Assembly (NCBI RefSeq): GCF_006345805.1
Contig: NC_043005.1
Span: 76,694,001 to 76,758,000 of the forward strand
DNA: 64,000 bases
Reading direction: 5' to 3'
From: Octopus sinensis
Lineage: Eukaryota
Shown: positions 21,900-64,000 of the stretch, piece after piece
Layout: each line of letters begins with the position of its first letter
Position numbering within the stretch: position 1 is the first letter of the stretch
Notes under the pieces: generated by a model
Told to the model about the DNA's origin: nothing
Seen by the model: the letters and a program-made list of their open reading frames with translations, nothing else
Databases searched by the model: none
Position numbers and translations under genes: made by a program

Positions 21900-22469
21900 C
21901 AACTACAGGTATATGAAATATTATACAGCATAAATTCTTGATTTATGAAATTCATATCTGACTGTAGAGGGTGTGTCATCATTACCGCAGGGCAATTAAA
22001 ATCAGCGCCGTGTCAGAAGGTGAGATTATCACAGGAATCAAAAATTCTCCAATTTTGACTTGAAAGAGACAGTACTATTGTTTGAATATAAGGAGACGAG
22101 TGTTTCTGCTTCAATAGAATTCATCAGCGCAACAGTTGTCAAACATAATCTTTAGCAGTGAAGGGACTTTGACATATATGCAGAGCAGAACACACGTATG
22201 GCTTAAGTAATTTACATTATTTGAAGGAAAATGACCTAAGAGAAAAAAGTCTGACTGACGCCTATTTAGCCAGAACACATGTTGGCGAGTTCATGAATGC
22301 CCTCTTTTCTCGTGAAAAATTAAATTGTCCTCAACTTTAATGCCTGTTAGTTTTGGAGAATTCTGGATTCTTGAAATTATCTCCCTTTCTCAAGTGGGGC
22401 CGGTCTTAACTGTCATACAATGCGATATATGTAAAATTTAAAGAGATATATAGAAATCCATATATATAT

Positions 22470-36340: not shown

Positions 36341-39300
36341 TTAGACATGCAAACCAAAATCTGTGTTATCTTTTTTATTAAAAACATCGAAAGCAGGATA
36401 CATGTCCAACAGTTTCAACGTACCACCCACCCCATTTGAACTCGCATCGGGGAAATTCTCCGATGGCCTTTTCATCTCTGCTCTCCTGATTTCAGCGGTT
36501 TCAGCAGTTTTCATCGACTCAGCCATACCATCCGTGCCACTTCTAAATTGCTTAGATGTAGTTTTGAGCTGTATTGTAATTTCCTTTTGGGGATCTTTAA
36601 TCATTCTCACCGCCTCACTTTCAGCTTTGTATACTCGCTTTTCTCCTCCCCAATCATAACCATTCTGTTGACTCTCAGCATATGAATTATCAGCCTCATC
36701 TGTAGCCGAGGTTTCGCTGAATGTCTTATAAACTATTTCGCTTACGCTATCATCGCTCTGCTTTATAAAATAGCTTTCTGGAGCAGACGATTTGAGCAAA
36801 GTATAATTTTCCGTTACTGTATCTTTCGTTGATTTCGATTCAGATACAGAATACATGTGTTCAGTTTCAAAGCCCGTTTTTAACTGATCAATTCCTGGGG
36901 TCGAAGAAGATGTCAACTTATAGGGAAACATTTGTGATGTAGATGTTTCTGGTTGGCCATTTTCTTTTTGTACCCACGATGGAAAACTAGCTACTACAGA
37001 ACTACTGGGAAGTAAACCTTTATCATGGACTACTGTTCTGGTTTGTAAAAAAGTGTCAGTATCCTTGAAAGTTTCTAAATCTGAAGAATGAAAAGAACGC
37101 TGTAACAAAGGGGACTTAACTGTCTCAGAATAGACATGAGACAGCAAAGGTTCACCAGTTTCTAATGGTACTGTGCAACTTGCGGTCTCTAAAACTAACA
37201 CTGAAGTAGAATGTTCAGTCTCGTGCTTTTCAGGTATAATAATGGATGAAGCTTTCATAGAATCATTCAATTTCGAGACTTCAGTAGACTCAGATCGTAA
37301 CTGGTATTTATTGTATTGAGAATTATCATATGTACTACCCTGATTCGATTCAATCTTAAAGGTGATACGATCTGAAGCATTGCCAGTTGTTACAGTGGGT
37401 TGGGAAATTATATTATCACTTGAGGTTTTTAGTTCAGTCTTATTCGTTGAGTTAAAAGATGGAATATATTCAGTGGACGCGGAGGGTGAATGTCTTAAGA
37501 TGTTGGCTTTATCAGATGAATCAGCAGGCCTAGTTGATATTGAAACTACAGATGAACTAGTTGTTACGTATTGTGATTGACTAGACGTGACTGGAAACAC
37601 TTTCTTCCCTGAAGTAGAAAACGAGGTAACTTTCAAGGATTCAGTGTTACTATAAGACCTAGGGGAGGCATCTTTGTCAGATATTAGTGACGTATAGTGT
37701 TTATCATGAGATAACTTTTCATGAAGTGATGAAGTTGCAGTTTTACTGTATTCCTCATCTTCTACAGAAGATTTGAGAGAATTGGCAGAAGCTGGTGATT
37801 GATATTTAATTTGATCTCCTGCCTCAACAGACGAACGACTTTCAGATAAAGTAGAAGTACATCTCCCAGATGCAGGTAAGCTTACACTTGTAGACTTTCC
37901 CTGCTTTAAATCTACTAGAGATTCAGACAAATATACAGGAGATAAAGCTGGTTGGGATGGAGAAGAATACCTTACTGAAAGTACAGGAGATTTTGCAGAA
38001 TTAATGGGTGACTTTACCTTTTGCGAATTTTCCAAAATGTTTGGGGAGATAACTGGTTCAGATTTTACAAAGGACTTGTCCTTCAGATAGTCTGCATCCT
38101 CAGATTGAATAGGTGATGTTGCTTTCTTAGATGACTGTTTTTTATCCGATATAACTTTTTCAGGGCTAGAAGGTGATTTAGCAGGTTTGGTTATCACAGT
38201 GGATTTAGCTTTTTCTGAGGGAGAAGTGGGTAACACTGAGTCAGAGGGTGCAGTTGGTACAGACTTGGTTTTCTCATATATCACAGAGGACTTTAAAGAT
38301 TCAGAAGTAATTGAAGATTTGTGTTTTTCAGAGGCCACAGGTGAAAGAGATCGATCCGATTTATCGGTTATACATTGTCCAGACAATACAGGAGACAAAT
38401 GTTCTGAGTCAGATTTAACAGGGGAGTGGGGAGACGTAGCTATCACAGATGATTTAAGGGTTTCAGATTCTGACTTTTCAGAAGGTTCAGGCGAAAGCCT
38501 TTGTTTCGATTGCATTGACTCTGTCTCCAGTGTGTGTGAAGAGGTTTTGAGGGATTTAGAAGATTTTGAAGAGACTGAGGTTTTTGACTTCTCAGATTCT
38601 GCTTTTTCTGAGGGCACATGTGATGAAGGCGATTTTGCGGCTGGTGACTGAACTGGAGATTTTGACTTAACAGATTCTGCTTTTTCAGAGGGTACGGGGG
38701 ATTGTGGGGATTTTGCAGGTTCTGAGGTGACAGGAGATTTTGACTTTTCAGATTCTGCTTTTTCTGAGGGTACAGGGGATTTTGCAGGTTCTGATGTCAC
38801 AGGAGATTTTGACTTTTCAGATACTGCTTTTTCTGAGGGAACAGGGGATGTTGCAGGAGATTTTGACTTTTCAGATTCTGCTTTTTCTGAAGGGGCAGGA
38901 GATACAGGGGTCTTCGCAGGCTCTGACGTTACAGGTGACTTTGATTTTTCAGATTCTGCTTTTTCTGGGGGGATAGGAGACTTTGGGGATTTTGCAGGTT
39001 CTGAGGTAACGGGGGATTTTGATTTTTCTGAGGTTACAGGGGATTTTGCAGGTTCTGATGTCACAGGAGATTGTGACTTTTCAGATTCTGCTTTTTCCGA
39101 GGGAACAGGGGATTTCGCAGGCTCTGAGGTGACAGGAGATTTTGACTTTTCAGATTCTGCTTTTTCTGAGGGTACAGGGGATTTCGCAGGTTCTGATGTG
39201 ACAGGAGATTTTGACTTTTCAGATTCTGCTTTTTCTGAAGATACAGGGGATTTTGTAGGTCCTGAGGTAACAGGGGATTTCGACTTCTCAGATTCTGCTT

Positions 39301-42300
39301 TCTCTGAAGTTACAGGGGATTTTGCAGGTTCTGATGTGACAGGAGATTTTGACTTTTCAGATTCTGCCTTTTCAGAGGGTACGGGGGATTTCGCAGGTTC
39401 TGATGTCACAGGAGATCCCGACTTTTCAGATTCTGCTTTTTCTGAGGGAACAGGGGATTTCGCAGGTTCTGATGTGACAGGAGATTTTGACTTCACAGAT
39501 TCTGCTTTTTCGGAGGGTACTGGGGATTTCGCAGGTTCTGATGTCACAGGAGATTTTGACTTTTCAGATTCTGCTTTTTCTGAGGGAACAGGGGATATCG
39601 CAGGTTCTGATGTGACAGGAGATTTTGACTTCACAGATTCTGCTTTTTCGGAGGGTACAGGGGATTTCGCAGGTTCTGATGTGACAGGAGATTTTGACTT
39701 TTCAGATTCTGCTTTTTCTGAGGGAACAGGGGATTTCGCAGGTTCTGATGTGACAGGGGATTTTGATTTTTCAGATTCTGCTTTTTCTGAGAGAACAGGG
39801 GATTTCGCAGGTTCTGATGTCACAGGAGATTTTGATTTCTCGGACTCTGCTTTTTCTGAGGGTACTGGAGATTTTGCAGGTTCTGATGTGACAGGGGATT
39901 TTGACTTTTCAGATCCTGCTTTTTCTGAGGGTACAGGGGATTTTGCAGGTTCTGAGGTCACAGGAGATCCTGACTTTTCAGATTCTGCTTTTTCTGAGGG
40001 AACAGGGGACTTTGCAGGTTCTGAGGTCACAGGAGATTTTGACTTCTCAGATTCTGCTTTTTCTGAGGGTACAGGGGATTTTGCAGGTTCTGATGTCACA
40101 GGAGATCCTGACTTTTCAGATTCTGCCTTTTCTGAGGGAACAGGGGATTTTGCAGGTTCTGATGTTACAGGAGATTTTGACTTTTCAGATACTGCTTTTT
40201 CTGAGGGCACAGGGGATTTTGCAGGTTCTGATGTCACAGGAGATTTTGATTTCTCAGATTCTGCTTTTTCTGAAGTAACAGGGGATTTCGCAGGTTCTGA
40301 TGTCACAGGAGATCCCGACTTTTCAGATTCTGCTTTTTCTGAGGGAACAGGGGATTTTGCAGGTTCTGATGTCACAGGAGATTTTGACTTTTCAGATTCT
40401 GCTTTTTCTGAGGGTACAGGGGATTTCGCAGGTTCTGATGTGACAGGAGATTTTGACTTCTCAGATTCTGCTTTTTCTGAGGGTACAGGGGATTTTGCAG
40501 GTTCTGATGTCACAGGAGATTTTGATTTCACAGATTCTGCTTTTTCTGAGGGTACTGGGGATTTCGCAGGTTCTGATGTGACAGGGGATTTTGACTTTTC
40601 AGATTCTGCTTTTTCTGAGGGTACTGGGGATTTTGCAGGTTCTGATGTGACAGGTGATTTTGCCTTTTCAGATTCTGCTTTTTCTGAGGGAACAGGAGAT
40701 TTCGCAGGTTCTGATGTCACAGGAGATTTTGATTTCACAGATTCTGCTTTTTCTGAGGAAACAGGGGATTTTGCAGGTTCTGATGTGACAGGAGATTTTG
40801 ACTTTTCAGATTCTGCTTTTTCTGAGGGCACTGGGGATTTTGCAGGTTCTGATGTGACAGGAGATTTTGACTTTTCAGATTCTGCTTTTTCTGAGGGCAC
40901 TGGGGATTTTGCAGGTTCTGATGTGACAGGAGATTTTGACTTTTCAGATTCTGCTTTTTCTAAAGTTACAGGGGATTTCGCAGGTTCTGATGTCACAGGA
41001 GATTGTGACTTTTCAGATTCTGCTTTTTCTGAGGGGACAGGGGATTTTGCAGGTTCTGATGTCACAGGAGATTTTGCTTTCTCAGATTCTGCTTTTTCTG
41101 AGGGGACAGGGGATTTTGCAGGCTCTGATGTGACAGGAGATTTTGACTTTTCAGATTCTGCTTTTTCAGAAGTTACAGGGGATTTCGCAGGCTCTGATGT
41201 CACAGGAGATCCCGACTTTTCAGATTCTGCTTTTTCTGAGGGAACAGGGGATTTTGCAGGTTCTGATGTGACAGGAGATTTTGACTTTTCAGATTCTGCT
41301 TTTTCTGAGGGTACAGGGGATTTCGCAGGTTCTGATGTGACAGGAGATTTTGACTTTTCAGATTCTGCTTTTTCTAAAAGAACAGGAGATTTTGCAGGTT
41401 CTGATGTGACAGGAGATTTTGCCTTTTCAGATTCTGCTTTTTCTGAGGGTACAGGGGATTTTGCAGGCTCTGATGTCACAGGAGATTGGGACTTTTCAGA
41501 TTCTGCTTTTTCTGAGGGTACAGGGGATTTCGCAGGTTCTGATGTGACAGGTGATTTTGCCTTTTCAGATTCTGCTTTTTCTGAGGGCACAGGTGATTTT
41601 GCAGGTTCTGATGTCACAGGAGATTTTGCTTTCTCAGATTCTGCTTTTTCTGAGGGTACTGGGGATTTGCAGGCTCTGATGTGACTGGAGATTTTGACTT
41701 TTCAGATTCTGCTTTTTCTGAAGTTACAGGGGATTTCGCAGGCTCTGATGTCACAGGAGATCCCGACTTTTCAGATTCTGCTTTTTCTGAGGCAACAGGG
41801 GATTTTGCAGGTTCTGATGTCACAGGAGATTTTGACTTTTCAGATTCTGCTTTTTCTGAGGGCACAGGGGATTTCGCAGGTTCTAATGTCACAGGAGATT
41901 TTGATTTCACAGATTCTGCTTTTTCTGAGGGTACAGGGGATTTCGCAGGTTCTGATGTGACAGGGGATTTTGACTTTTCAGATTCTGCTTTTTCTGAGGG
42001 TACAGGGGATTTTGCAGGTTCTGATGTGACAGGAGATTTTGATTTCACAGATTCTGCTTTTTCTGAGGGTACAGGGGATTTCGCAGGTTCTGATGTGACA
42101 GGTGATTTTGATTTCACAGATTCTGCTTTTTCTGAGGGTACAGGGGATTTCGCAGGTTCTGATGTCACAGGAGATTTTGACTTTTCAGATTCTGCTTTTT
42201 CTGAGGGTACTGGGGTTGTTGCAGGTTCTGATGTGACAGGAGATTTTGATTTCACAGATTCTGCTTTTTCTGAGGGAACAGGGGATTTTGCAGGTTCTGA

Positions 42301-44995
42301 TGTGACAGGAGATTGGGACTTTTCAGATTCTGCTTTTTCTGAGGGAACAGGGGATTTTGCAGGTTCTGATGTCACAGGAGATTTTGACTTTTCAGATTCT
42401 GCTTTTTCTGAGGGTACTGGGGATTTCGCTGGTTCTGAGGTCATAGGTGATTTTGCCTTTTCAGATTCTGCTTTTTCTGAGGGAACAGGGGATTTCGCAG
42501 GTTCTGATGTCACAGGAGATTTTGACTTTTCAGATTCTGCTTTTTCTGAGGGTACAGGGGATTTCGCAGGTTCTGAGGTCATAGGTGATTTTGACTTTTC
42601 AGATTCTGCTTTTTCTGAGGGAACAGGGGATTTTGCAGGTTCTGATGTGACAGGTGATTTTGACTTTTCAGATTCTGCTTTTTCTGAGGGAACAGGGGAT
42701 TTCGCAGGTTCTGATGTCACAGGAGATTTTGACTTTTCAGATTCTGCTTTTTCTGAGGGCACAGGGGATTTCGCAGGTTCTGATGTGACAGGAGATTTTG
42801 ACTTTTCAGATTCTGCTTTTTCTGAGGGAACAGGGGATTTCGCAGGTTCTGATGTGACAGGAGATTTTGACTTTTCAGATTCTGCTTTTTCTGAGGGCAC
42901 AGGGGATTTCGCAGGTTCTGATGTGACAGGGGATTTTGACTTTTCAGATTCTGCTTTTTCTGAGGGTACTGGGGATTTCGCAGGTTCTGATGTCACAGGA
43001 GATTTTGATTTCTCGGACTCTGCCTTTTCTGAGGGTACTGGAGATTTTGCAGGTTCTGATGTGACAGGGGATTTTGCCTTTTCAGATTCTGCCTTTTCCG
43101 ATAGAACAGGGGATTTTGCAGGTTCTGATGTGACAGGGGATTTTGACTTTTCAGATTCTGCTTTTTCTGAGGGTACTGGGGATTTCGCAGGCTCTGATGT
43201 GACAGGTGATTTTGATTTTTCAGATTCTGCTTTTTCTGAGGGCACGGGGGACTTCGGGGACGTTTCAGGTTCTGATGTCACAGGAGATTTTGACTTTTCA
43301 GATTCCGCTTTTTCCGAGTGGACTGGGGATTTGGGTGACTTTGCAGGTTCTGATGTCACAGGAGATTTGGACTTTTCAGATTCTGCTTTTTCGGAAGGCG
43401 AAGGCGAGTGAGCTTTACTAGATTTCACTGAATCTGCTTTCTCTGATGATACAGGAGATTTTGGCGATACACTACTTTCTGTTGTTTCAGCTGTAGATTT
43501 TTCTGTTTCTACTTTTTCTGACTTTACTGTTGTTACGGTACGGACTGTGGTGACTGATAAGGATTTTTCGTATACTTCATCAGGCGATGGTGAGTGCTCT
43601 GATGGGGTAGAGGGCTTAGTGGTTAGATCTTCATCGTGTACGCTAGGTGATTTAGGTTTTTCAGATAGCACGGGTGACTTTTCGGATTTAGGTGATTCTG
43701 ATTTATGGGGAGATGTAACTGGTTCAGACTTTTCAGATTCAGATTTAACAGAAATAGTTGGGGATTTAGGTGCTTCAGATACTACGGGAGATTTAGCGGT
43801 AGGAGTGCGTGCATCATCTGCAGGGATGGGTGACTTTGCATGTTCAGATAAAATTGGGGAAGTTACCTTTTTAGATTCTGTTTTCGAAGGCGAGAGAGAT
43901 TCAGCAACAGATGCTTCAGATCCTGTAGGTGATTTACTTGACTTCAATGGTTTTTCTTTTTCTGGGGACCCGGCAGATTTTACAGATTTCTCTGATTCAG
44001 CGTTATCGCTGACCTCATCCTCTGCTGGTGAAACACATTTTTCAGATGCTGCTTTCAATGTTTCAGATTTATCAAGACCGTCAGCGACTGACTTTTCGTG
44101 TTCTGATGGTGTTGAAGCCTTTTCAGATTCGGCCCTTTCGGATTCGGCTTTTTCAGATTCAGCTGGAGTTGTTGCTTTTTCAGATTCGGCCCTTTCCGAC
44201 TCAGCTTTTTCAGACTCGGCTTTTTCCGATTCAGCTTTTTCAGACTCGGCTTTTTCCGATTCAGCTTTTTCAGACTCGGCTTTTTCCGATTCAGCTTTCT
44301 CAGACTCGGCTTTCTCCGATTCAGCTTTTTCAGACTTGGCTTTCTCCGATTCAGCTTTCTCAGACTCGGCTTTTTCCGATTCAGCTTTCTCAGACTCGGC
44401 TTTTTCCGATTCAGCTTTTTCAGACTCGGCTTTTTCCGATTCAGCTTTCTCAGACTCGGCTTTTTCCGATTCTGCCTTCTCTGATTCTGCTTGAACAGAT
44501 TCTGTTCTCTCTGATTCTGCTTTTTCTGATTCTTCACTAGTCGTTACGACTGTTTTCACAGATTTTACTGTTCGAACTGTCTCTACAGTGATGATATCCT
44601 CTTCAGCTTCCGAAGCTACGTTTTCGACGTCTTCATCAGGCGATTGAGTTTTCTCAGCTGTCACGTCTCTGTAGTCTGTTTTTAATATGAACTCTTCTTT
44701 CACTTCATCTAGACCTGTTCCGGTATCAGCATCTGAATCAGCTTTAGTTTCTTCGGCCTCAGCTTCTGTGTGTGTGTCGGAATCACTGTCTTTCCCTTCA
44801 TCATCTGCTTCTTCTCCAGTCTGGTGGTAGCTTTCTGTTAGAGAACTATGCTCCATTACGATTTTCTCTGGTGAGATCGCTTTTCTTTGCATTGCTCTTG
44901 CACTATGGCTCGTCGTTCGAACTTCTCTTTTAATCAAGTCTGGTGTGTAGGGTTCTCGGCTTCGGTAAGTCATTGGAGGCTGTACTAACTCGATC
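36341..44995 (-). CDS. NF220: Neurofilament gene, giant NF220/NF-H-type terminal exon of about 2,884 aa, with an apparent 1-bp frameshift at about 41666-41669
   Basis: Acceptor ctccctcctgcag/G completes the Arg codon from the rod exon donor at 53073, giving LLEGEETR-IELVQPPMTYRS. ORFs 41614-44973 and 36341-41617 carry the same repeat in two frames. TAA is at 36341-36343. The acidic segment DDEGKDSDSDTHTEAEAEE and the KSP repeats resemble squid NF220 as I recall it. Confidence 0.88.
38600..43411 (-). repeat. Coding minisatellite: 69-bp (23-aa) unit KSPVTSEPAKSPVPSEKAESEKS
   Basis: About 60 near-perfect units plus several irregular end units (estimated as span/69). Two KSP motifs per unit. Confidence 0.97.
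44176..44490 (-). repeat. Coding 15-bp repeat, (AESEK) x21
   Basis: 315 nt = 21 pentapeptide units, with three more units at about 44119-44163. Confidence 0.95.
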
Positions 44996-46677
44996 CTGCA
45001 GGAGGGAGATAAATAACTTTGTCCACCCAGGAAACTACCCCAAGAAGTAGATACAATAACGTAGGAGTAATTTTAAAAGATGTTTCCTATGTTTCCGTCC
45101 AGTGAATTTTTTCTAAGGAAATTTCCTGTATACCAATATATCCTTATCTCATCATTATACGTGTTATTGAAAACAGATGCCAAAAAAAAGTATTACTAGA
45201 AAAGTATGAAAATGAACCTCCATCTCCATTATTCTCGTGTATCTATACAGATAGTATGCATACAATATATGTGAAATCCGTTCTAATGTGTCGAAATGAA
45301 ACAATGTAATATAAAATATGAGTTGATATTGAAGTAACGAGTATAATGATTGTATATACTAATATATATATATATATTTATTTATATACACCAACCAACA
45401 CATCAGGGGGTCCGAAGCGTATCTATCACTCATACATATGTGTGTGTGTGTGTGTGTGATCAAATAGACCTCAATGGGTCTGATGATGTTCTGCGTCGGC
45501 CAGATTTATATTACGTAGTAAAATCGACGCATAAAGTGCAGTAAACTAGTTGTGTTTGCCACACACAGGCACACACATGTATATATATGTATACATATAT
45601 ACATATAACACTTATATGTATATATATGTATACTTATATATACACATAAACACATATGTATATATATATAGATAGATATAAATATATATATATATATAAT
45701 ATGCATGTATATGCATACATATGCATATATATATACGTGCGTATATGAGTATGCATTTATACACGTATAAACTTTTGTCGCTTTATAATAAAGAAAGCTG
45801 TATTTCAATCAGCCAGCCTATCAGTACAAATGTAGTGAATACATTGTAGATATATGCTGGACCTTCGTTGATAAAATTGCAGGTTCAGCAATCGTCCAAC
45901 GCGCAACGAGACATAAAAGCAGATCTGTCATGTCAACAACGTCGATATTCGTTTTTCGGGCTTTGGTATACCATATGGTATGTATTTTATGCGCATAATT
46001 ACGCATACAAAGCACCGATTGTAACCTGCGTATCTACATTAAAAACGTTCCTTTTATTTGAAAAAGAAACAACCGGACCGATGCCTTTAATAATCTGTTA
46101 TGGACACCATGAAAATGATGGATCAAAATACTGAAAACATAGGGCTAAAGTAGGATACACCTATTATTAATTAAAATTTTATATCAGCAACTGTTTCCCT
46201 AAGTATGTTTTAATGCCCTCCTCAAAGCACACTCACTCACAAACAGCTTCCTCATACAAGCAAGCATATCAATTTGATGTCTTAGTCTTAACGGAAATAT
46301 TTGCACTCATAATTAGATTCACAGTTGGAGATAATTTATGAATGTTTACACATTTCAATTTTATCATAAATTGATCTCTTGAATTTTAGAAAGAAATTTT
46401 ATAATAATCCCCTAGATTTCATATAATGATAACTCTGCCCATCTACTAACATAAAGAAATCCAAGGAAATCTATTCCTTTATATTTCTGCTGATGAAAAT
46501 TAGTTAAATATGAGCAATCATCTATATTAAATTGTGTTTATTTCTGTGAATTCGCATGATATGATGTGATATAAATATAAATACAATTATATACATGAAT
46601 ATATATATATATATATATATATATGCACGTTTGTATATCTATCTAACTTATATCATGCATACATACATGCACATATA

Positions 46678-46746
<69 letters not shown>

Positions 46747-46927
46747 GTGTGTATCCAATTACAATGGGACCGAAAAAGGAATGAGAGAGAGGGGAAGAGA
46801 AAGGTTGGGGAAAATAAGGGGATGAAACTATGCATTTTTAATTATCAATAATCATCATTTGCAATTAATATTTAATATCCTTCGATTTTGCTATCTGAAT
46901 TGATTATATATCTGCTTAATTTGACTT

Positions 46928-46934
46928 ATCCGCA

Positions 46935-46985
<51 letters not shown>

Positions 46986-46987
46986 AC

Positions 46988-47026
<39 letters not shown>

Positions 47027-47030
47027 TAAT
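46928..47030. repeat. (AAT)n microsatellite
   Basis: Directly visible. It is the source of the poly-Ile ORF. Confidence 0.95.
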
Positions 47031-48419
47031 AAGATTAGATACACTGGTTTCGAGAATAATGGAAGGTAAGTTCTTTTGTTATTTGAAGTTAATTAGTATA
47101 TCAGTTTACGAAAACTAGTTTAATTTAAATTTTAAAACGTTATCTGATTTGTTGATTTGTGTATATTAAGTATTTTGAGTTGGATAAAGATATATTGGTT
47201 TCAGTTTGACAAAAGGTTGAGGTGGAATCATCGAAACTGGACCAAACCAATAAACAATCATTGAATATCTCACGGACACCAATGCCAGCTGCCGGCGTCA
47301 CATATTACTATGGTTTCAAAAACAGAGACAATATCGGGATTCTATTGTGTTTGACATAATAACATCAGGAGAGTTATCTAGGGAAATTGCCGTTAAATTT
47401 GCTTTTCATAAAACGTTAGAAGTTTTAAAATAGGGTTCAGTAAAGAAGGAAAACATTAATCTTATGAAACGACGGAAGCAATCACTAAACCAAATCTAAA
47501 GAGTATTTTGTTTTTTTACATATGCACTTTAGAGCTTTCTTGTACAAAATTATCCAGAACTAAGGTTCATCGGTTCTTAAAAAACTTTTCAATTAATCTA
47601 GTTGTTTCAATACCTAAACACAGAATTTTTTGATCGGTGATACCGTACAAAAATGTTAACTTTTTAACATTCATTCTAGCAATAAGCATATTATGAGATA
47701 TCATTGGCTTAATGTTTAATGTATTTCAATTGTAGCTTTCTATAAAATACATACCAATAAAACCATAGAGAGTAACGAGAAAAGTAATCCAGAAACAATA
47801 TTTTCTATTAAATTAACCTATCTTCGTAGGAATTGATTAGCTTTCGCAGTAAATGCTTATTAATAATTTTGTCCACCTGATTACAAATTTGGAAAGTTGG
47901 AACAGTGGACTCAATCTTACTGCTATTTGTTGTATGGATGCCAGAAGAAAAAGGCAGAGTTGTTACTGAATACAACAAAACGTTGTATGTCGTTTTCTCT
48001 TTCTCTCTTTCGTTTTCAACAATCCTTATATTCTTACTATTGCTTTCCTTTTGATGAAGAAAAACTTCCTATTTAGATCTACTGTATTTTCGGCTTTCCT
48101 TTCTCCCTCTTTTATCCAACAGGTGTGGTAAAATTATTAAAATTATCTATGTGAAGGTATAATTAGTCTATAATTTCATCGAACAAAATTTCGCTATCGG
48201 ATAGATTGTTAAAATGACTTAGTTAGCAAACTAATGATATTTCAACATGCAAATACAAAAATACTATTAACGATGACAAAACACTGAAGCGAGCATTTTT
48301 CAAAGCTATATCAATGAGAAGGGTCAAGTTCATACACCTTGGATTGTGACCAACAGGTGGCGTGTTATAAATTCTAGCAATTTATTATCTGTGAATTTTA
48401 ATCCTATTAAATATGATAT

Positions 48420-48439
48420 TTGTATAAATATATATATAA

Positions 48440-48480
<41 letters not shown>

Positions 48481-48577
48481 TGTATGTATATATATATATA
48501 ATATATATGTATGTATATATATATATATATAATATATATGTATGTATATATATATATATATATAATATATATGTATG

Positions 48578-48629
<52 letters not shown>

Positions 48630-48700
48630 GTATGTATATATATATATGTGTGTATATACATATATACATACATATATTATATATATATATTTATATATAT
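48420..48700. repeat. Compound (TA)n/TATG microsatellite
   Basis: Directly visible. Confidence 0.95.
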
Positions 48701-49807
48701 AGTCGAATGTCATTAATTTACATTTCGTTTCACTCTTAAGTCCAATTCATTGTGACAAGATTAGCTCTATATAAATATGGAATAAACTATACTTTGTATC
48801 GTTTAGTTACAGAAAACAACCCACAAATTCTAATTTACCCAGCTCCTAACCCATTATCATCTCTATAGAGTTTGGTATAAACTTGAATAGAATAAGCTAA
48901 TTTTTTATAATCATCATTATGATTATTATTATAAATATATAAATATATATATAAATATATATAAATATATGCAATTGAGGAACACTGAAGCTAGTTGTCA
49001 GTTAAATGTGAATATATGAGACCATCTTCTTATTCTTATACTTTAAAATCCTGGTATGTAGCACACTATGTTTTTTATGGCAAGTTATTAGGTTTACAGA
49101 GAATTTAAAGCTGCTTTTGGTTATGCAGTTTAAATGGTAAGATAATAAATAAGATAACTAAATTAGAGTGGGATGTGAGGGTAATTTTGCATGAAAATAT
49201 AAGACTAAGACTGACATAAAAAATTGTGGTATACTTTTTACAAAAAACAAAAAACAACATAAAATATATGTGTATATCGCCTAATTAATTGTTCATCATA
49301 TTTTGGAGTTGCTTTTAGGAAGGGAACACTAAAGAGAAAAAAAAATACAAACAATGGAAGAAAGGAAAATAAGAAGTCTGAATCAAGGCTTAAAAATTAT
49401 GATTCGTATTTGCTACTCATTGAAAGCCGATAGTAATGATAACACTAATATATATTGTTATTTGTTAATAATATTAACGGATAGCTATTGAACTACTAAT
49501 AATAGCTATTGTCTTAAACATCTTATAAAGTCATGATATTAATAATAATAATGGAGCACCGATCAAAGAACTCAAAGTTTATATATATGTATACATTGCA
49601 TTTTATTATCTAGCTACAGTAAATTGCAGATTAACTATTGTCAACGTCTTACATTATTTTATTAATACTAACTATATTATTACTAACCCTAATTTTAGTT
49701 TACCAGTTATTTAAGTTCAGGCATTCTTGTTGGTCAAGAAAGAGCTAAATAATGCATATTTAATTTTCTATACAATGAAGAAAATAGAAGTATACTGCAG
49801 CGTACAT

Positions 49808-49858
<51 letters not shown>

Positions 49859-52800
49859 ATGACTTTCGAATTTCATTGTATAGATCTAAATGTTGGAAGG
49901 AAGCAAAAATATGTGACTCCGACTTAGCGTTAAATCTTATGTAGTCTTAATTATGAAATAAGCACATGTTCACAGGCACCTCTGACTACATATATATATA
50001 TTTATATATATAAATATATGTATGTATTATATATATGTATTATATATATATATATATATATGAATCACTGCTCTACAGTTGTTATGCTAGGTAAAATTGA
50101 AAATAACTATCCACTTACACTCATCACACTTGCACTCACACTCAATGACAGATGGTATATGTTTGGTAATACATTTGTTAAGGCACATAATCGATGACAA
50201 TTAAAGAAGAACCTTCATTATCATTAAATATCTAATAACAGTTCGACGTTAAAAATAATTAACCAATACCCTATGTTGTCGGTAAAAATGAACATATTTA
50301 TAAATGTATATTTTTCATTGATGTGATTTGAATTATATTTAATGATATCTAGAGTTATATGTATTCTGCCGAGACGATGCATTATGATTTGATTCACTGT
50401 GGATACATGGCCGAAGCTGTTAGAATAATAGCATTTAATGATAGGTAAATATTCTTCTTTGTGCTATTGACTGTGTTTTGTTTCATTTAATTGCACCAAT
50501 CAATATCTAAATATCCGAGATGATGCTATGAAACTTTAGAAATACAAAAGTTTTGGTAACCGGCCAAGGTGAATTAAACATTAATCATTGTAACTCGGGG
50601 AGTTCCTTATGACATAAATCTGTTCAGTTGGTTACTTTCAACACATGAATGATGAATTGCTAAAATCCTGACACATTGATCTTGAAAATGTCCAAACCAT
50701 AATAATCCAGAACACGGCAGAAATGATATTACTGAATAATACTGAAATCTGATTTTTTCTTCATAAGTGTTAATGATGATGATGATAACAATATCGATAA
50801 TGCCGTCAATGTTGATGAGGGCCTTCATGATAATAATCCTCCTATGTATACTGTGAAATATTTTCTTGAATTTTCAGTACCATTTTTTTACTGACAGTAT
50901 TGTAGTTCTTTGTTGCCAAAGTATACATTCATCAGCTCACATCTCGCTCGTAAACATATACTGGAAGTAAAAGCTACTATATACATATAACGAAATCACA
51001 TCCATACTTTATTTTGACTGACTCTGATTTCTGATAGACAAATAAAGCATACTATAAATTTTGAAAGTATCATTAACCTCTTAAGTGATGTCTACATACA
51101 TGCTATTTTACCGAAAGTATTTATTAAAGGAATAAGACTGTATCTAATGGACATTTTGCTGATAAGCCATGGTATCCTTAAATATTTTTAACAATACAAT
51201 ACATTCATTTATCTCGCATAAAATATATATCGAGACACACCGATAGCGTGAAACTTATTCTTGAAGAAATATATTAATATTAAACAGAAAAAAAAAGCCA
51301 ATAACGAAATTTAAACTGCAGTGGTATAATAATACTAAAGAATAAGACACTTTCGTCACATTAACACCACGCAAATTATAAAGTAATTGAAAATACATAG
51401 AAAATATTTTCTGCCATGAATATTCATGCCCAAAAGCTGACTTAATTCCAATGCCATTTTTATTAAACACATTACTAATGGACAATACAGTGAGATGAAT
51501 AGCCACATTTCCAGATTTATGCCATAGAGTTGAACATAAGAATTTGAAGAAAGGAGTTGCAAGATTTTAGGACCGATTTTGTATTTCTTGAAGCTATGAA
51601 CTTAAATAAAGCTTGACGTATGATAGCGGATTCATTATAACAGTAAAATACATTGTCACACTTTTCAACATCTATTTTTCATTGACATATTCTAAAACTA
51701 TCTATAAGTATATTGATTTATGTATATTCCATACAAGTCTGAATACTTAAATGGTAACCAAGAAATAGTTAGTTTTTCTTATTTCTTTTCCTACAGCTTC
51801 AGGAGTACAAATTATCAAAGCCGAAAAAACCGAGATAGAGTATCAAATCGGAAATTTAGTAATACTTTTGAAAATATTCTATTATTGTTTGAAAAATAGG
51901 TATTAATCCGTGCGTCAATGCATTTCAGGAAAAAAAACACTGAATGTAATGAATAATGAAATAACACATAAATAAAAAAATATATATATGATAAATAAAT
52001 GAGTAAGAAATAGCCAACACTAATTAATCGATTGATGCGCTCAGGAATGCCTTGATGAATCTCGACTTGAAATTTCGATTATATCACGAAGGGAGAACCA
52101 GACTCAGTAATGATGATGCGAGTAATGACGCTAGTCGGACATGTATTTTATTTTTTTTTGCTGGTAAAGACAAATGCAAAAGAGCTGTAGAAAATGTACA
52201 AATCTTTTCTCAACTTACGTGATCGGTCGTTACAAGTGTATAAAATGCAACCGATTTGCTTTTCCCAACAATTCATAATTTTCTATACAAATTCACCGTT
52301 TCGAAAGCGTTTATATTAATTCTTTAGGCTGAAATCTCTGCTAAAGGATACATTATTAGCGATAAAACAAGCACATAATAGCCTATTGCAATATTTTTAC
52401 GTATAGGAACGCGCATATGATTCGTATATACATTCGTAAATATTGTAACAAGTTTTGTTACGTACACAAATTATTTCCTAATATATTCCGGTTCAAACCG
52501 GTAAAAGACATCGACGAAAAATATTGTTCGATTAAAATGCTTGTAGGAAATTAAATATGAATGTTTGTACACGAGATTCTTAAAGATAGGAACTAATAAC
52601 GTTTCCACCTTTAAGATCTATGTGGATCTTAAAGGTTTATATCTTGTTACATATTGTATGAAACATTTGTATTTCGATCTCGTACCTTCTTTTTGATCTC
52701 AAGTAATACCTCTAAAATAACAAAGGTATTGATCATCAATGCTTTTCATCATATACAAACTCTAACACAGATTTATCTATACGTTATGCTTTCCTTTTTT

Positions 52801-59371: not shown

Positions 59372-59934
59372 CTGTAAAAATAAACAGCATTCGTTATATT
59401 TAACTATTTGATTTATAGCGAGCTACAGTAAATTATAAAAAAAGTTTTATTGAGAAACCACCCCTAAAAATTTCACCGTTTTCAAACATTTTTGGTGGTT
59501 CATCAGAAATTGATTTTAAATATGAAGAAATATAGATTAGTGAACAGCCCAAATTATATTCTACGCTCATCTTATTAACATCAAGATTGTAATGCTATAT
59601 TGCTTTCAGATGAAGACATCTCTAAAATGGTAGTCAAATATAAATATTTTCAATTGATCCATGTACATACGCCATGCAACACATTTTATTGTCGAATTAT
59701 TTTCACCAGGAAACTTTGTATGTATGCTTTCTAAGGGTCGTCAGGTAGGTAAATCTTGATTTTGACAAAAACGCTTTTTGCTGGGATCTGATATTTTATA
59801 TTGATTTGGGGACTGCACCCATGGCTTCCACAGGCCCGCCAAAGTTTGTGAAACCAATCCAGCTAATGTTTTCCTTGAATCATAGAAGCCTGGTTCTTAA
59901 TGGAAGAATGAACGTAGGATTTTACTAGAAAGTT

Positions 59935-61868: not shown

Positions 61869-61964
61869 CTGTGCATGCAAGTCTTTCTGGAATTCAAGCT
61901 CTTCTTCAAGTGTTTGTCTTCTATTTTCAGCGTCTAAGTGGTTGATGGTTTCGTTATTCAAATC
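61869..61964 (-). CDS. NF70: Neurofilament gene, end of coil 1B exon (DLNNETINHLDAENRRQTLEEELEFQKDLHAQ); 5'-most exon in the window
   Basis: gtcattacag acceptor and gtatgt donor, 96 nt, phase 0-0. It has the LEEELEF coil 1B motif. Not in the ORF track. Confidence 0.95.
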
Positions 61965-62124
61965 CTGTAATGACACAATGAAAAAGGAGAGTTCAGCTAC
62001 GGTGCAAAAAATACGAAGCAATACTTCATACAACGGATATAAAAGAAAATTGTTTTAAATAACAGCAAGTTCCGTGGTATCAGTGGTTGTGATGATATAT
62101 TGTTTTGCTCATTAAAGATATGAA

Positions 62125-62330
62125 GTGATGGATCTCCGTCGTTCAAATTGAAGATTCACTTGTCCGGACAACTGAATTACCTCCTCTTGAATCAACGTGT
62201 AAGTGGCTGAGCAATTTCACAGACACGTGTACCCTTGAATACACGTATATTTCGCAGTGTGACAGGTTACTTTTGAATTACAGATACAGCCCATCCGACG
62301 GCCTTTTCTACAGTTTTCTTCTACCCAATT
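62125..62330 (-). mobile_element. Decayed SINE 3' body
   Basis: ACGTGTAAGTGGCTGAGCA...CACAGACACGTGTACCCTT resembles the 3' body of a common octopus SINE as I recall it. No head is visible. Confidence 0.5.
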
Positions 62331-62706
62331 GCTTACAGAAGCCAGTGGCCGATACAGGCTATAAAAAAAAGTGAAAATTTTCCATGATACCTTGCCATAG
62401 GATAGAATTGCGGCCTTACTGCGTTGAAATGGACTTTTTAAACATTCGTCCATACTGCACACATACACACACACGCTCATATTCACACGTACGCGCCCGC
62501 ATCACACAGGCACACTTATATAAACTACTATGTTTAGAGATAATTGAGGTTTGGGGACAGGACGGGTATCCGGTAATAATAGAACTCCCTCAATGAATAA
62601 TGTCTCATCCATGCATACATGGAAACGGAGACGTTAAAACTATACTATATAATAATAATAATAATAATAATAATGATAATAATAATTATAATAATAATAA
62701 TAATAA

Positions 62707-63243
62707 CAGCCCTGGTGCAGTACCAGGCAGTGGCGCTCATGGCTTCTGATCTTAACTGATTGGAAATGTCATCATGTACATTGTTTTGTCTTGGTATAAA
62801 AGATGGGTTACAGCAAATATTCTGCTCAATACCACAGATTTGCTTGTCAGTTGTTTGACCTTAACCAGTTGAGCATGTCCCTTAGTGGCTGACGATATGT
62901 GCATCTCTGATGGGGGAGCATCATAGTCATGTGCTGAGAATTCTTTGGGGTTTGAATTATTCACCTATGGAAACATGGGTGTTTCGTTCAACATCCTTAA
63001 ACAACCCTTATTCAGGGACCTTTTGAGCGGGATGGGTTACTCGACCAGAAGAAAATTCTAACTGGGCACCACCTGCAAGGTCCTGTGCTGTTTATCTTGA
63101 TATAAGATCACTATGTCGCGCACATATGGTTGTGATGCAAGTTCTTAGTGTACTCTTATCAGACGAGTAATCACGATGGGTATACAGGGCTTCGTATATT
63201 TTACCCCAGTGTCATTTTGATGACATGCACTGCTCTCTCACTC
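62707..63243. mobile_element. About 540-bp GC-richer block bounded by (AAT)n on both sides; probable interspersed repeat
   Basis: Sharp boundaries at (AAT)n tracts 62649-62706 and 63244-63290, and higher GC than the flanks. I recall this as a frequent octopus repeat but have not verified it. Confidence 0.5.
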
Positions 63244-63291
<48 letters not shown>

Positions 63292-63477
63292 TTAATATAG
63301 ACGGCCGTATGCAATGTTTTACCATAAAGGAAAACTATAATTGTCACTAAATATGATTAGACAGTTAGAACACTTACGTTGCTAGAAATAAAAGCTAAAA
63401 AGCTCAAATACTGTAGTTAAAGCATATAATTATATATATATGTACTGAGAGGGACTCGTAGACGTCCATAAGCATCG

Positions 63478-63548
63478 GTCGAGAATTCCCTATACTGATC
63501 GGCCAGTTTCAGCTAATTCCGTAGCCTCATCAGTAGGGACCGCTCGAC
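63478..63548 (-). ncRNA. Type I hammerhead ribozyme with extended stem I, on the sense strand of a neurofilament intron
   Basis: Minus strand reads GTCGAG-CGG-TCCCTA-CTGATGA-GGCTA-CGGAAT-TAGCT-GAA-ACTG-GCCGAT-CAGT-A-TAGGGA-ATT-CTCGAC. Core CUGAUGA and GAAA are intact. Stem I is 6 bp, a 3x3 internal loop, then 6 bp. Stem II is 5 bp with a G-U closing pair. Stem III is ACTG/CAGT. The GUA cleavage site is between 63493 and 63492. Confidence 0.88.
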
Positions 63549-64000
63549 TTCAGCTTTTTTCTAGACTTGCATCTCTATCACTACATATGTATTCGCCATA
63601 TGTATAAGGGAAGCTGTACGTATATATTTAAATATATATTCCCATTAAGAAATTTATAGCGAAAAACTATTCAGTACAAGAATTATCAGAAATATCAGCT
63701 AAAAGAAAATTCAAAATGCAGATAATGTCAACAATACTTACACCTATATGATTATTCTTTTGAATGCATAACGCTGAAAGATCTGTTGAATGCAGAGATC
63801 TTTGTGAAATGCTATTCCAAGTTTATTTCACATTTAAATATAGTACTAAGGTTTGAATTATTTGACTTGGTATTATTCATTGTAAAATTTAGAATATTAA
63901 CATAAGAGTTATAGCTATAAATCACCACTGATATACCTTAGATCATACGCACGTGTGCACGACTGCATGTGTACATTAAAAATTAAAATACATATGTGTA

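What the first reader, a model, noticed from the sequence alone, without database searches (positions are those of the whole stretch)
63478..63548. Near-intact self-cleaving hammerhead ribozyme in the sense strand of a neurofilament intron
Seen: the catalytic core is complete (CUGAUGA, GAAA, GUA site), all three stems pair, and stem I continues past a 3x3 internal loop (CGG/AUU) into six further perfect pairs (GUCGAG/CUCGAC). The only deviation is G-U instead of G-C closing stem II. It lies on the transcribed strand about 1.5 kb upstream of exon 61869-61964. Known: natural type I hammerheads use loop II to stem I bulge contacts for fast cleavage at physiological Mg2+, occur in retrozymes and Penelope-like elements, and are found in some vertebrate introns. 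Inference: the pre-mRNA for all three isoforms could be cut co-transcriptionally, coupling splicing speed to neurofilament output, with G-U possibly attenuating cleavage. Alternatively this is a recent solo retrozyme-like insertion of about 180 bp between TA tracts (about 63442-63620). That this position is intronic is inferred, because the upstream exons lie outside the window.
Basis: partly seen in the sequence, partly recalled or inferred. Interest (0 to 1): 0.82.

Follow-up and report, generated by a model that had tools for sequence, protein, structure and literature searches.

The report
Lone hammerhead ribozyme in octopus neurofilament intron
A complete self-cleaving hammerhead ribozyme motif does sit on the transcribed strand of an octopus neurofilament intron, but it looks like a single stray copy of a known kind of mobile element rather than a conserved regulator of the gene.

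Summary
Minus strand 63548..63478 encodes a full type I hammerhead with an intact core, three helices and a GUA cleavage site (cut between 63493 and 63492). The only core-adjacent deviation is a G-U pair at 10.1/11.1. It is the only such motif in the window and is far beyond chance. A covariance model built only from four experimentally validated animal retrozyme hammerheads finds it at 28.3 bits (E about 8e-6); the next best hit scores 13.6 bits. Rfam does not call it at gathering score. The host gene is the neurofilament gene of Octopus vulgaris or a near-identical species, with exons 100% identical to CAI9729291.1. Residues 1-240 are encoded beyond 64000, so the motif is intronic and in sense. 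It lies in a GC island of about 175-180 nt, between TA tracts, in an AT-rich intron. There is no second copy and no tandem partner. The complete 97-kb orthologous gene of the cuttlefish Acanthosepion pharaonis has no hammerhead. The best reading is a solitary non-LTR-retrozyme-like insertion that may cleave slowly. A host regulatory role is unsupported but not excluded within octopods. Copy number and conservation among octopods could not be tested.

The parts
63478..63548 (-). Complete type I hammerhead ribozyme motif (71 nt), including the distal extension of helix I
   Evidence: Sequence read and hand-built structure, -22.1 kcal/mol. Only descriptor hit in the window, with 0-0.013 hits per shuffled window. 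Model R1, built from validated retrozyme hammerheads, gives 28.3 bits, E=7.6e-6, full-length match 63539-63487.
63527..63533 (-). Catalytic core strand CUGAUGA (C3-A9)
   Evidence: Direct reading.
63511..63526 (-). Helix II (GGCUA/UAGCU) with loop CGGAAU. G10.1 (63526) pairs with U11.1 (63511) instead of C.
   Evidence: Direct reading. UGAAA could be a CpG-to-TpG change of the consensus CGAAA (inference). The validated axolotl HHR_Amex2 also has UGAAA, with a U-U at this position.
63494..63510 (-). Core GAA, then helix III (A-CUGG / UCAG-U, loop CCGA)
   Evidence: Direct reading. Helix III has 5 bp, which is longer than in the four validated retrozyme hammerheads.
63492..63493 (-). Predicted scissile bond, 3' of A17 (63493) and 5' of U1.1 (63492)
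   Evidence: Position of the GUA triplet relative to helix III and helix I.
63440..63618 (-). Putative inserted element of about 175-180 nt carrying the hammerhead. GTACA is present at both ends (63618-63614 and 63444-63440).
   Evidence: GC is 45-50% against 23-30% in the flanking intron. CpG observed/expected is 0.99 against 0.75-0.84 in the window. The whole stretch folds at -56 kcal/mol, z=-3.1. There is no other copy in the window. The boundaries are inferred from composition only; no empty site was available.
63616..63640 (.). TA-rich tract on the 5' side (minus strand) of the element
   Evidence: Inverted repeat I1 and direct reading.
63424..63445 (.). TA-rich tract on the 3' side (minus strand) of the element
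   Evidence: Inverted repeat I1 and direct reading.
61869..61964 (-). Next downstream exon of the neurofilament gene (residues 241-272 of CAI9729291.1; Pfam Filament profile positions 110-142)
   Evidence: tblastn gives 100% identity. Pfam match.

Best explanation
The motif is a genuine type I hammerhead carried by a solitary insertion of about 175-180 nt. The insertion is of the non-LTR retrozyme kind: small non-autonomous retroelements of animals that are related to Penelope-like elements. It landed in a TA-rich tract of an intron of the Octopus neurofilament gene, in the sense orientation. By analogy with the cuttlefish gene this is intron 2.

Being a single unit, it cannot release a unit-length RNA for circularisation, so it is a dead-end copy. 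When the intron is transcribed the motif may fold and cut the pre-mRNA between 63493 and 63492. I expect this to be slow and partial, for two reasons: the G-U pair at the base of helix II, and a more stable competing rod-like fold.

Any effect on neurofilament mRNA is a by-product tolerated by the host, not a selected regulatory device.

Shown: the motif, its statistical significance, its fit to validated retrozyme hammerheads, the intronic sense location, the lack of a tandem partner, and its absence from the cuttlefish orthologue.
Inferred: the origin by retrotransposition, the boundaries of the insert, and the level of activity.
For: - Complete core and three helices.
- Only hit in the window, absent from shuffles.
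- Model R1, built from coral, mussel and two axolotl retrozyme hammerheads that were shown to cleave (PMC7229834), scores it at 28.3 bits, E=7.6e-6. The next best hit is 13.6 bits.
- It has canonical helix sizes and a stable helix III. PMC7229834 and PMC7761336 describe these as typical of invertebrate retrozyme hammerheads, in contrast to the minimal hammerheads of Penelope-like elements.
- The GC island (45-50%) sits in a 23-30% GC intron, with CpG observed/expected 0.99.
- The size and the GC content below 50% fit the reported 150-450 bp units.
- The whole 183 nt is strongly self-paired, z=-3.1.
- The flanks are TA tracts. PMC8557442 reports (TA)n as the microsatellite target of Naiad-clade Penelope-like elements, which lack canonical hammerheads, and a general microsatellite bias for Penelope-like elements.
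- Monomeric copies are dispersed and often intronic in Xenopus.
- 235 Rfam Hammerhead_1 loci were reported in the giant squid genome (PMC6962438), so such elements exist in cephalopods.
- There is no hammerhead in the 97-kb cuttlefish orthologue.
Against: - No second copy of the element or of this hammerhead variant was found anywhere I could search. That covers the window, about 166 kb of other cephalopod loci, two metagenome scans, two viral scans, and a protein search with six-frame translations. Membership of a repeat family is therefore inferred, not shown.
- No octopus whole genome could be searched.
- There is no clear target-site duplication. The boundaries rest on composition only.
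- Rfam's Hammerhead_1, HH9 and HH10 models do not reach even the 21 bits of the permuted Hammerhead_3 match.
- The sense orientation and intact core in a very highly expressed gene are somewhat unexpected for a neutral insert, given the reported depletion of retrozymes from introns.
Confidence: 0.65

Rival explanations
1. Domesticated intronic ribozyme. The hammerhead is retained in octopods because co-transcriptional cleavage of intron 2 competes with splicing and tunes the output of all neurofilament isoforms. It is analogous to the amniote RECK and C10orf118 hammerheads, or to the CPEB3 ribozyme.
For: - Sense strand, intact core, stable helix III, and an extended helix I with an internal loop placed to contact loop II.
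- All alternative 3' tail exons lie downstream.
- The motif is 1.5 kb from the next 3' splice site. Cleavage rates of 0.1-0.8 per min, as measured for invertebrate retrozyme hammerheads, would be of the same order as splicing times (inference).
- There is precedent for domesticated repeat-derived intronic hammerheads (PMC6155905, PMC3088659).
- There is precedent for an intronic ribozyme that lowers expression (PMC10919898).
Against: - Absent from the entire orthologous cuttlefish gene.
- No match to the Rfam HH9 or HH10 models.
- Weakened 10.1/11.1 pair.
- Looks like a compositionally foreign insert.
- There is no conservation evidence of any kind, and conservation is the only criterion by which the amniote cases were recognised.
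Confidence: 0.08
2. Catalytically dead relic. The element is transposon-derived as above, but the G-U pair at 10.1/11.1 and the competing rod fold abolish self-cleavage, so it has no effect on the transcript.
For: - The minimum-free-energy fold (-30.0 kcal/mol) is not the hammerhead fold (-22.1). UACUGAU of the core pairs with AUCAGUA of helix III and the cleavage site, and GGCUA pairs with UGGCC.
- The hammerhead-compatible ensemble is 8.7 kcal/mol less stable.
- Changing 11.1 back to C in silico does not remove the gap.
Against: - The same calculation on hammerheads that do cleave gives gaps of +4.0 to +10.0 kcal/mol. Mussel is +7.7 and still cleaves at about 0.1 per min (with rates). The gap is therefore not diagnostic.
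- The axolotl HHR_Amex2 has a U-U at this position and still cleaves.
Confidence: 0.2
3. Chance resemblance. The motif arose by accident in intronic sequence and has no relation to ribozyme-bearing elements.
For: - Rfam gathering scores are not reached.
- No relatives were found.
Against: - 0 hits in 300 shuffles at stems >=5/4/3.
- R1 gives E=7.6e-6 per window, before counting the features the model does not score: the 6 extra base pairs of distal helix I and the longer helices II and III.
- My rough analytic estimate for stems of this length is below one occurrence per 3-Gb genome (inference).
- The motif coincides with a compositional island.
Confidence: 0.04
4. Part of a live element. It is either one unit of an active tandem retrozyme that yields circular RNA, or the terminal repeat of a Penelope-like element.
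For: Intact hammerhead, undepleted CpG and a self-paired RNA.
Against: - No second hammerhead or repeat unit lies within 63549-64000 or downstream.
- No reverse-transcriptase-sized ORF lies nearby. The only long ORFs in the window are neurofilament exons and repeat artefacts.
- Helix III is not of the minimal type seen in Penelope-like elements.
Confidence: 0.03

Closest known systems
Non-LTR retrozymes of animals (coral Acropora, mussel Mytilus, axolotl; Cervera and de la Pena 2020, PMC7229834)
   Same: - Canonical type I hammerhead with a full core and a helix I internal loop facing loop II.
- A helix III stable enough to act as a monomer, as in invertebrate examples.
- Unit size in the reported 150-450 bp range, GC below 50%, and a highly self-paired RNA.
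- It scores as the one significant hit to a model built from these hammerheads.
   Different: - A single unit rather than a tandem array, so it cannot give a unit-length circular RNA.
- No other family copies were found.
- G-U at 10.1/11.1.
- Helices II and III are longer than in the four validated examples.
- No evidence of expression.
Conserved intronic hammerheads of amniotes (Rfam HH9 in RECK, HH10 in C10orf118/CTCL, also DTNB)
   Same: A type I hammerhead on the sense strand of an intron of a protein-coding gene. Those are thought to derive from repeat-borne hammerheads.
   Different: The amniote motifs are defined by conservation across birds and/or mammals, and they cleave in vitro. Here the orthologous cuttlefish gene lacks the motif, and the Rfam HH9 and HH10 models do not match.
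Minimal hammerheads in the pseudo-LTRs of Penelope-like elements
   Same: Type I topology and an animal retroelement context. The insertion lies in a TA-rich tract, and PLEs show a microsatellite insertion bias, (TA)n being the target named for the Naiad clade. Retrozymes are proposed to be non-autonomous derivatives of these elements.
   Different: Those hammerheads have almost no helix III and act as dimers next to an RT/GIY-YIG ORF. Here helix III has 5 bp and there is no such ORF in the window.
CPEB3 intronic HDV-like ribozyme of mammals (PMC10919898)
   Different: A different ribozyme class, conserved across mammals and experimentally shown to matter. Nothing comparable is shown here.

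Membership tests
Hammerhead ribozyme (motif) | Conserved core CUGANGA ... GAAA ... UH, with A15.1-U16.1 and C15.2-G16.2 | tested here: met
   CUGAUGA at 63533-63527, GAAA at 63510-63507, and GUA with A17 at 63493.
Hammerhead ribozyme (motif) | Three helices around the core, with helix I open (type I) | tested here: met
   Helices of 6 (+6 distal), 5 and 5 bp.
Hammerhead ribozyme (motif) | G10.1-C11.1 pair closing helix II | tested here: not met
   It is G-U (U11.1 = 63511). A validated natural family (axolotl HHR_Amex2) also departs here, with a U-U.
Hammerhead ribozyme (motif) | Self-cleavage at the predicted site | not testable with these tools
   Needs an in vitro transcription assay. Folding energetics are inconclusive: the gap of +8.7 kcal/mol lies within the +4.0 to +10.0 range of active controls.
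Rfam Hammerhead_1 / HH9 / HH10 (clan CL00010) | Score at or above the family gathering score | tested here: not met
   No match at gathering score. The best clan match is a permuted Hammerhead_3 alignment, 21.1 bits against 48.5.
Animal retrozyme-type (canonical type I) hammerheads | Fit to a sequence-and-structure model of experimentally validated members | tested here: met
   R1, built from 4 sequences and not including this one, gives 28.3 bits, E=7.6e-6, a full-length match and the sole significant hit. The E-value calibration is rough.
Non-LTR retrozyme (element) | Tandem repeats of two or more units, each with a hammerhead | tested here: not met
   There is one unit only. Monomeric derivatives are, however, common in other genomes.
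Non-LTR retrozyme (element) | Unit of about 150-450 bp, GC below 50%, no LTR, PBS or PPT | tested here: inconclusive
   The GC island is about 175-180 nt at 45% GC. The boundaries are inferred from composition only.
Non-LTR retrozyme (element) | Multiple related copies in the same genome | not testable with these tools
   No octopus whole genome was searchable by DNA. There are no copies in the 64-kb window or in about 166 kb of other cephalopod loci.
Non-LTR retrozyme (element) | Expression as linear and circular unit-length RNA | not testable with these tools
   Needs RNA data.
Domesticated intronic hammerhead | Conservation at the orthologous intron across distant species | tested here: not met
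   Acanthosepion pharaonis neurofilament gene (L008): the orthologous intron is 43123-52711. There is no hammerhead anywhere in 97 kb by a relaxed descriptor or by R1 with filters off. Conservation within octopods was not testable.
Penelope-like element pseudo-LTR | Adjacent RT/GIY-YIG ORF and a minimal helix III | tested here: not met
   No such ORF appears among ORFs of 90 aa or more. Helix III has 5 bp.

The most novel reading that the evidence does not exclude
An active, sense-strand hammerhead has been retained in intron 2 of the octopus neurofilament gene. It cuts a fraction of nascent transcripts and so sets the output of all neurofilament isoforms in neurons. This would be an invertebrate, lineage-specific counterpart of the amniote RECK/C10orf118 hammerheads and of the CPEB3 ribozyme.
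Probability: 0.07. Interest if true: 0.6.

Novelty: new member of a known kind. Interest (0 to 1): 0.25.

Why it matters
Type I hammerheads are widespread in animal genomes as cargo of retrozymes and Penelope-like elements, and single copies in introns are common. On the present evidence, one more copy is an ordinary transposon annotation.

It is worth recording for three reasons:
- Cephalopod hammerhead elements have not been described beyond a count of Rfam hits in the giant squid genome.
- This variant escapes Rfam's gathering thresholds, so such copies are probably under-annotated.
- A sense-strand, apparently intact ribozyme inside one of the most highly expressed neuronal genes is a convenient natural test of how well intronic self-cleavage is tolerated.

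It would become important only if it proved conserved among octopods and active in vivo.

Tried and rejected
1. Rfam at gathering score on the whole window gave nothing. At E-value threshold it gave only a permuted Hammerhead_3 match.
2. I looked for relatives in several ways, and all failed.
   - Two exact-pattern scans of the metagenome collection. The first found nothing. The second found three chance matches inside GC-rich microbial coding sequence.
   - Two scans of viral contigs found nothing.
   - A protein search with six-frame translations of the element and its flanks, hoping for spurious ORFs called on other copies, found nothing at E<=10.
   - A second such search with intron ORFs returned only intermediate-filament proteins matching the exon.
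3. I first took the O. bimaculoides locus L002 for the orthologue. It is a paralogous intermediate-filament locus with 73% exon identity, while the window is 100% identical to O. vulgaris CAI9729291.1. Its lack of a hammerhead therefore says nothing about orthologous conservation, and I do not use it.
4. L001 is a related octopod at 88% nucleotide identity, and L007 is Argonauta hians. They cover only other parts of the gene.
5. Look-ups of the O. vulgaris isoforms P0121 and P0242, and of a window ORF, were not on record.
6. I considered using the stable alternative rod fold as evidence of inactivity. I rejected it after the control on validated hammerheads gave similar energy gaps.
7. I considered CpG content as an age estimate. 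It is weak here because the window as a whole is only mildly CpG-depleted.
8. No tRNA-like head was found anywhere in the window, on either strand.
9. The literature search found no description of cephalopod hammerhead elements beyond PMC6962438.

Full report
**The observation**

Read on the minus strand, 63548..63478 is GUCGAG CGG UCCCUA CUGAUGA GGCUA CGGAAU UAGCU GAAA CUGG CCGA UCAG U A UAGGGA AUU CUCGAC. This is a complete type I hammerhead.
- Helix I has six pairs next to the core, a 3x3 internal loop, and six more pairs.
- The core strand CUGAUGA is at 63533-63527.
- Helix II has five pairs with a six-base loop.
- GAAA is at 63510-63507.
- Helix III has five pairs (A15.1-U16.1, C15.2-G16.2, U-A, G-C, G-U) with loop CCGA.
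- The triplet is GUA, with the scissile bond between 63493 and 63492.

The hand-built structure has -22.1 kcal/mol.

**Is it more than chance?**

A descriptor search (core, GAAA, UH and three helices) finds this site and nothing else on either strand of the window. In 300 dinucleotide-preserving shuffles of the window there were 0 hits at stems >=5/4/3 and 0.013 hits per window at stems >=4/3/2.

Rfam gives nothing at gathering score. At a permissive threshold it gives only a circularly permuted Hammerhead_3 alignment of 21.1 bits against a gathering score of 48.5, so the type I, HH9 and HH10 models score lower still.

Because Rfam's verdict was negative, I built an independent test.
- I took the hammerheads of four animal retrozymes that were cloned and shown to self-cleave: coral Amil224, mussel Mg353, and axolotl Ax353 and Ax330. 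The sequences come from the supplement of PMC7229834.
- I aligned them (A1) and made a covariance model with the textbook structure (R1).
- With all filters off, R1 finds 63539-63487 (minus strand) at 28.3 bits, E=7.6e-6, matching the whole model. The next best hit in the window is 13.6 bits, E=0.16.

The E-value calibration is rough. On the other hand, the model does not score the six distal pairs of helix I or the extra pairs of helices II and III. I conclude that the motif is a real hammerhead of the kind carried by animal retrozymes.

**The gene and the organism**

The minus strand encodes an intermediate-filament gene.
- A named protein from the database, O. vulgaris 'neurofilament medium polypeptide-like' (CAI9729291.1, P0121, 503 aa), matches the window. 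Residues 241-272 (61964-61869), 442-480 (31070-30954) and 480-503 (30100-30029) are 100% identical. The other three rod segments (59383-59207, 58332-58204, 53317-53066) align at 90-98%; their mismatches lie at alignment ends that run past the exon boundaries, and the exon translations I checked by eye match P0121 exactly.
- A related cluster, joined through exon 61869-61964 (97% identical to its representative P0122), holds the squid Doryteuthis pealeii NF60 and NF70.
- The window also holds lamin-tail-domain exons (11212-9718) and a giant KSP-repeat exon (44973-36341). These are the three alternative tails known for the squid gene.

The window is therefore Octopus vulgaris or a near-identical species. 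Residues 1-240 are not encoded in the window, and no Filament-like segment lies in 61965-64000. In the cuttlefish gene two exons precede the orthologous exon. The hammerhead is thus intronic, on the transcribed strand, 1.5 kb upstream of the next exon and upstream of all alternative tails. It is probably in intron 2.

**The surroundings**

The motif sits in a GC island (45-50% GC over about 63446-63618) inside an intron of 23-30% GC.
- CpG observed/expected is 0.99 in the island, 0.75-0.84 in the window, and 0.40 in a neighbouring block.
- Both sides are TA-rich tracts that form an imperfect inverted repeat.
- GTACA occurs at both ends (63618-63614 and 63444-63440). This is a weak hint of a slightly more-than-unit-length copy of about 174 nt.
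- The whole 183 nt folds into a closed, highly paired structure, -56 kcal/mol, z=-3.1.
- There is no second copy and no second hammerhead in the window.

These features fit published descriptions. Units of 150-450 bp, GC below 50%, self-paired RNAs, and canonical hammerheads with a stable helix III are reported for invertebrate retrozymes (PMC7229834 and PMC7761336). Monomeric derivatives are dispersed along chromosomes, and about 43% of Xenopus copies overlap introns (bioRxiv 10.64898/2026.07.22.740005). Penelope-like elements show an insertion bias for microsatellites, and (TA)n is the target named for the Naiad clade, which itself lacks canonical hammerheads (PMC8557442).

**Would it cleave?**

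The minimum-free-energy fold of the 71 nt (-30.0 kcal/mol, z=-4.1) is not the hammerhead. UACUGAU (the end of helix I plus C3-U7) pairs with AUCAGUA (the 3' strand of helix III plus the cleavage site), and GGCUA pairs with UGGCC. The result is a rod. The hammerhead-compatible ensemble is 8.7 kcal/mol less stable.

Before using this as evidence against activity I ran the same calculation on the four validated ribozymes. Their gaps are +4.5 (coral, about 0.8 per min), +7.7 (mussel, about 0.1 per min), +4.0 (Ax353) and +10.0 (Ax330, poor as a monomer) (rates). The gap is therefore not diagnostic. At most it places this motif among the slower ones.

The G-U at 10.1/11.1 keeps G10.1. A natural family of about 60,000 axolotl copies has U-U there and still cleaves. 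UGAAA could be a CpG-to-TpG change of CGAAA, but without a family consensus that is only an inference. I put catalytic competence in vitro at roughly even odds.

**Conservation**

Conservation is the criterion that separates a domesticated ribozyme from a stray insert.

I retrieved the whole neurofilament gene of the cuttlefish Acanthosepion pharaonis with its introns (L008, 117 kb) and mapped its exons. The intron orthologous to the one holding the hammerhead is 43123-52711. A deliberately relaxed descriptor finds no hammerhead on either strand of the 117 kb. R1 finds none with default filters, and none with filters off over the 97-kb gene.

The motif is therefore not a conserved part of the cephalopod neurofilament gene. 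I could not test closer relatives.
- The O. bimaculoides locus I first fetched (L002) turned out to be a paralogue.
- The related-octopod contig L001 and the Argonauta locus L007 cover other parts of the gene.

**What I could not establish**

I found no other copy of the element or of this hammerhead variant. I searched the window, about 166 kb of other cephalopod DNA, two metagenome scans, two viral scans, and two protein searches designed to catch ORFs called across other copies. No octopus genome can be searched by DNA with these tools. Membership of a repeat family is thus inferred from anatomy, and from the reported 235 Hammerhead_1 loci in the giant squid genome (PMC6962438). It is not shown.

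**Verdict**

The best explanation (0.65) is a solitary, retrozyme-like insertion carrying a canonical type I hammerhead. It is possibly a slow self-cleaver, tolerated in the intron, and without a selected host function.

A further 0.2 goes to the same origin with a catalytically dead motif. The regulatory reading gets about 0.08. It is not excluded within octopods, but nothing supports it beyond orientation and intactness.

This is a new member of a known kind, of modest interest.

Noticed in passing
window 41600-41700 (minus strand), within the KSP-repeat exon 36341-44973: The giant KSP-repeat tail exon is split into two overlapping ORFs in different frames (41614-44973 and 36341-41617). One repeat unit reads GCAAATCC where its neighbours read GCGAAATCC. 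This one-base loss shifts the frame. It may be an assembly error in the repeat array, or it may be a real truncating allele.
   Followed up: partly
window 62707-63243, flanked by (ATA)n at 62649-62706 and (AAT)n at 63244-63290: A block of about 540 bp is GC-richer (43%) and strongly CpG-depleted (observed/expected 0.40). It is bracketed by trinucleotide microsatellites and lies 150 bp from the hammerhead element. It looks like an older insertion. No tRNA-like head was found, and there is no other copy in the window or in the fetched cephalopod loci.
   Followed up: partly
window 63478-63548 (minus strand): The hammerhead sequence has a second, more stable rod-like fold in which helix III mimics the core (CUGG versus CUGA). 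Such bistability is typical of viroid-like and retrozyme RNAs and may itself be a selected property of the parent element.
   Followed up: partly
L002 (O. bimaculoides CM046621.1, 9216436-9241239): The locus holds at least two intermediate-filament gene copies in tandem that are paralogous to the neurofilament gene. Their exon identity to the window is 73% and 56%. The annotated models appear to join or split them.
   Followed up: no
window 59448-59506 (minus strand) and 22095-22127 (minus strand): Two weak hammerhead-like matches: stems 3/3/3 by the relaxed descriptor, and 13.4 bits by R1 covering a partial core only. Both are at the level expected by chance.
   Followed up: no
window 38727-43411 (plus strand): Very long antisense ORFs (985 and 576 aa, repeating GDFDFSDSAFSE) run opposite the KSP-repeat exon. 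They are most likely a by-product of the repeat's codon composition and not genes.
   Followed up: no
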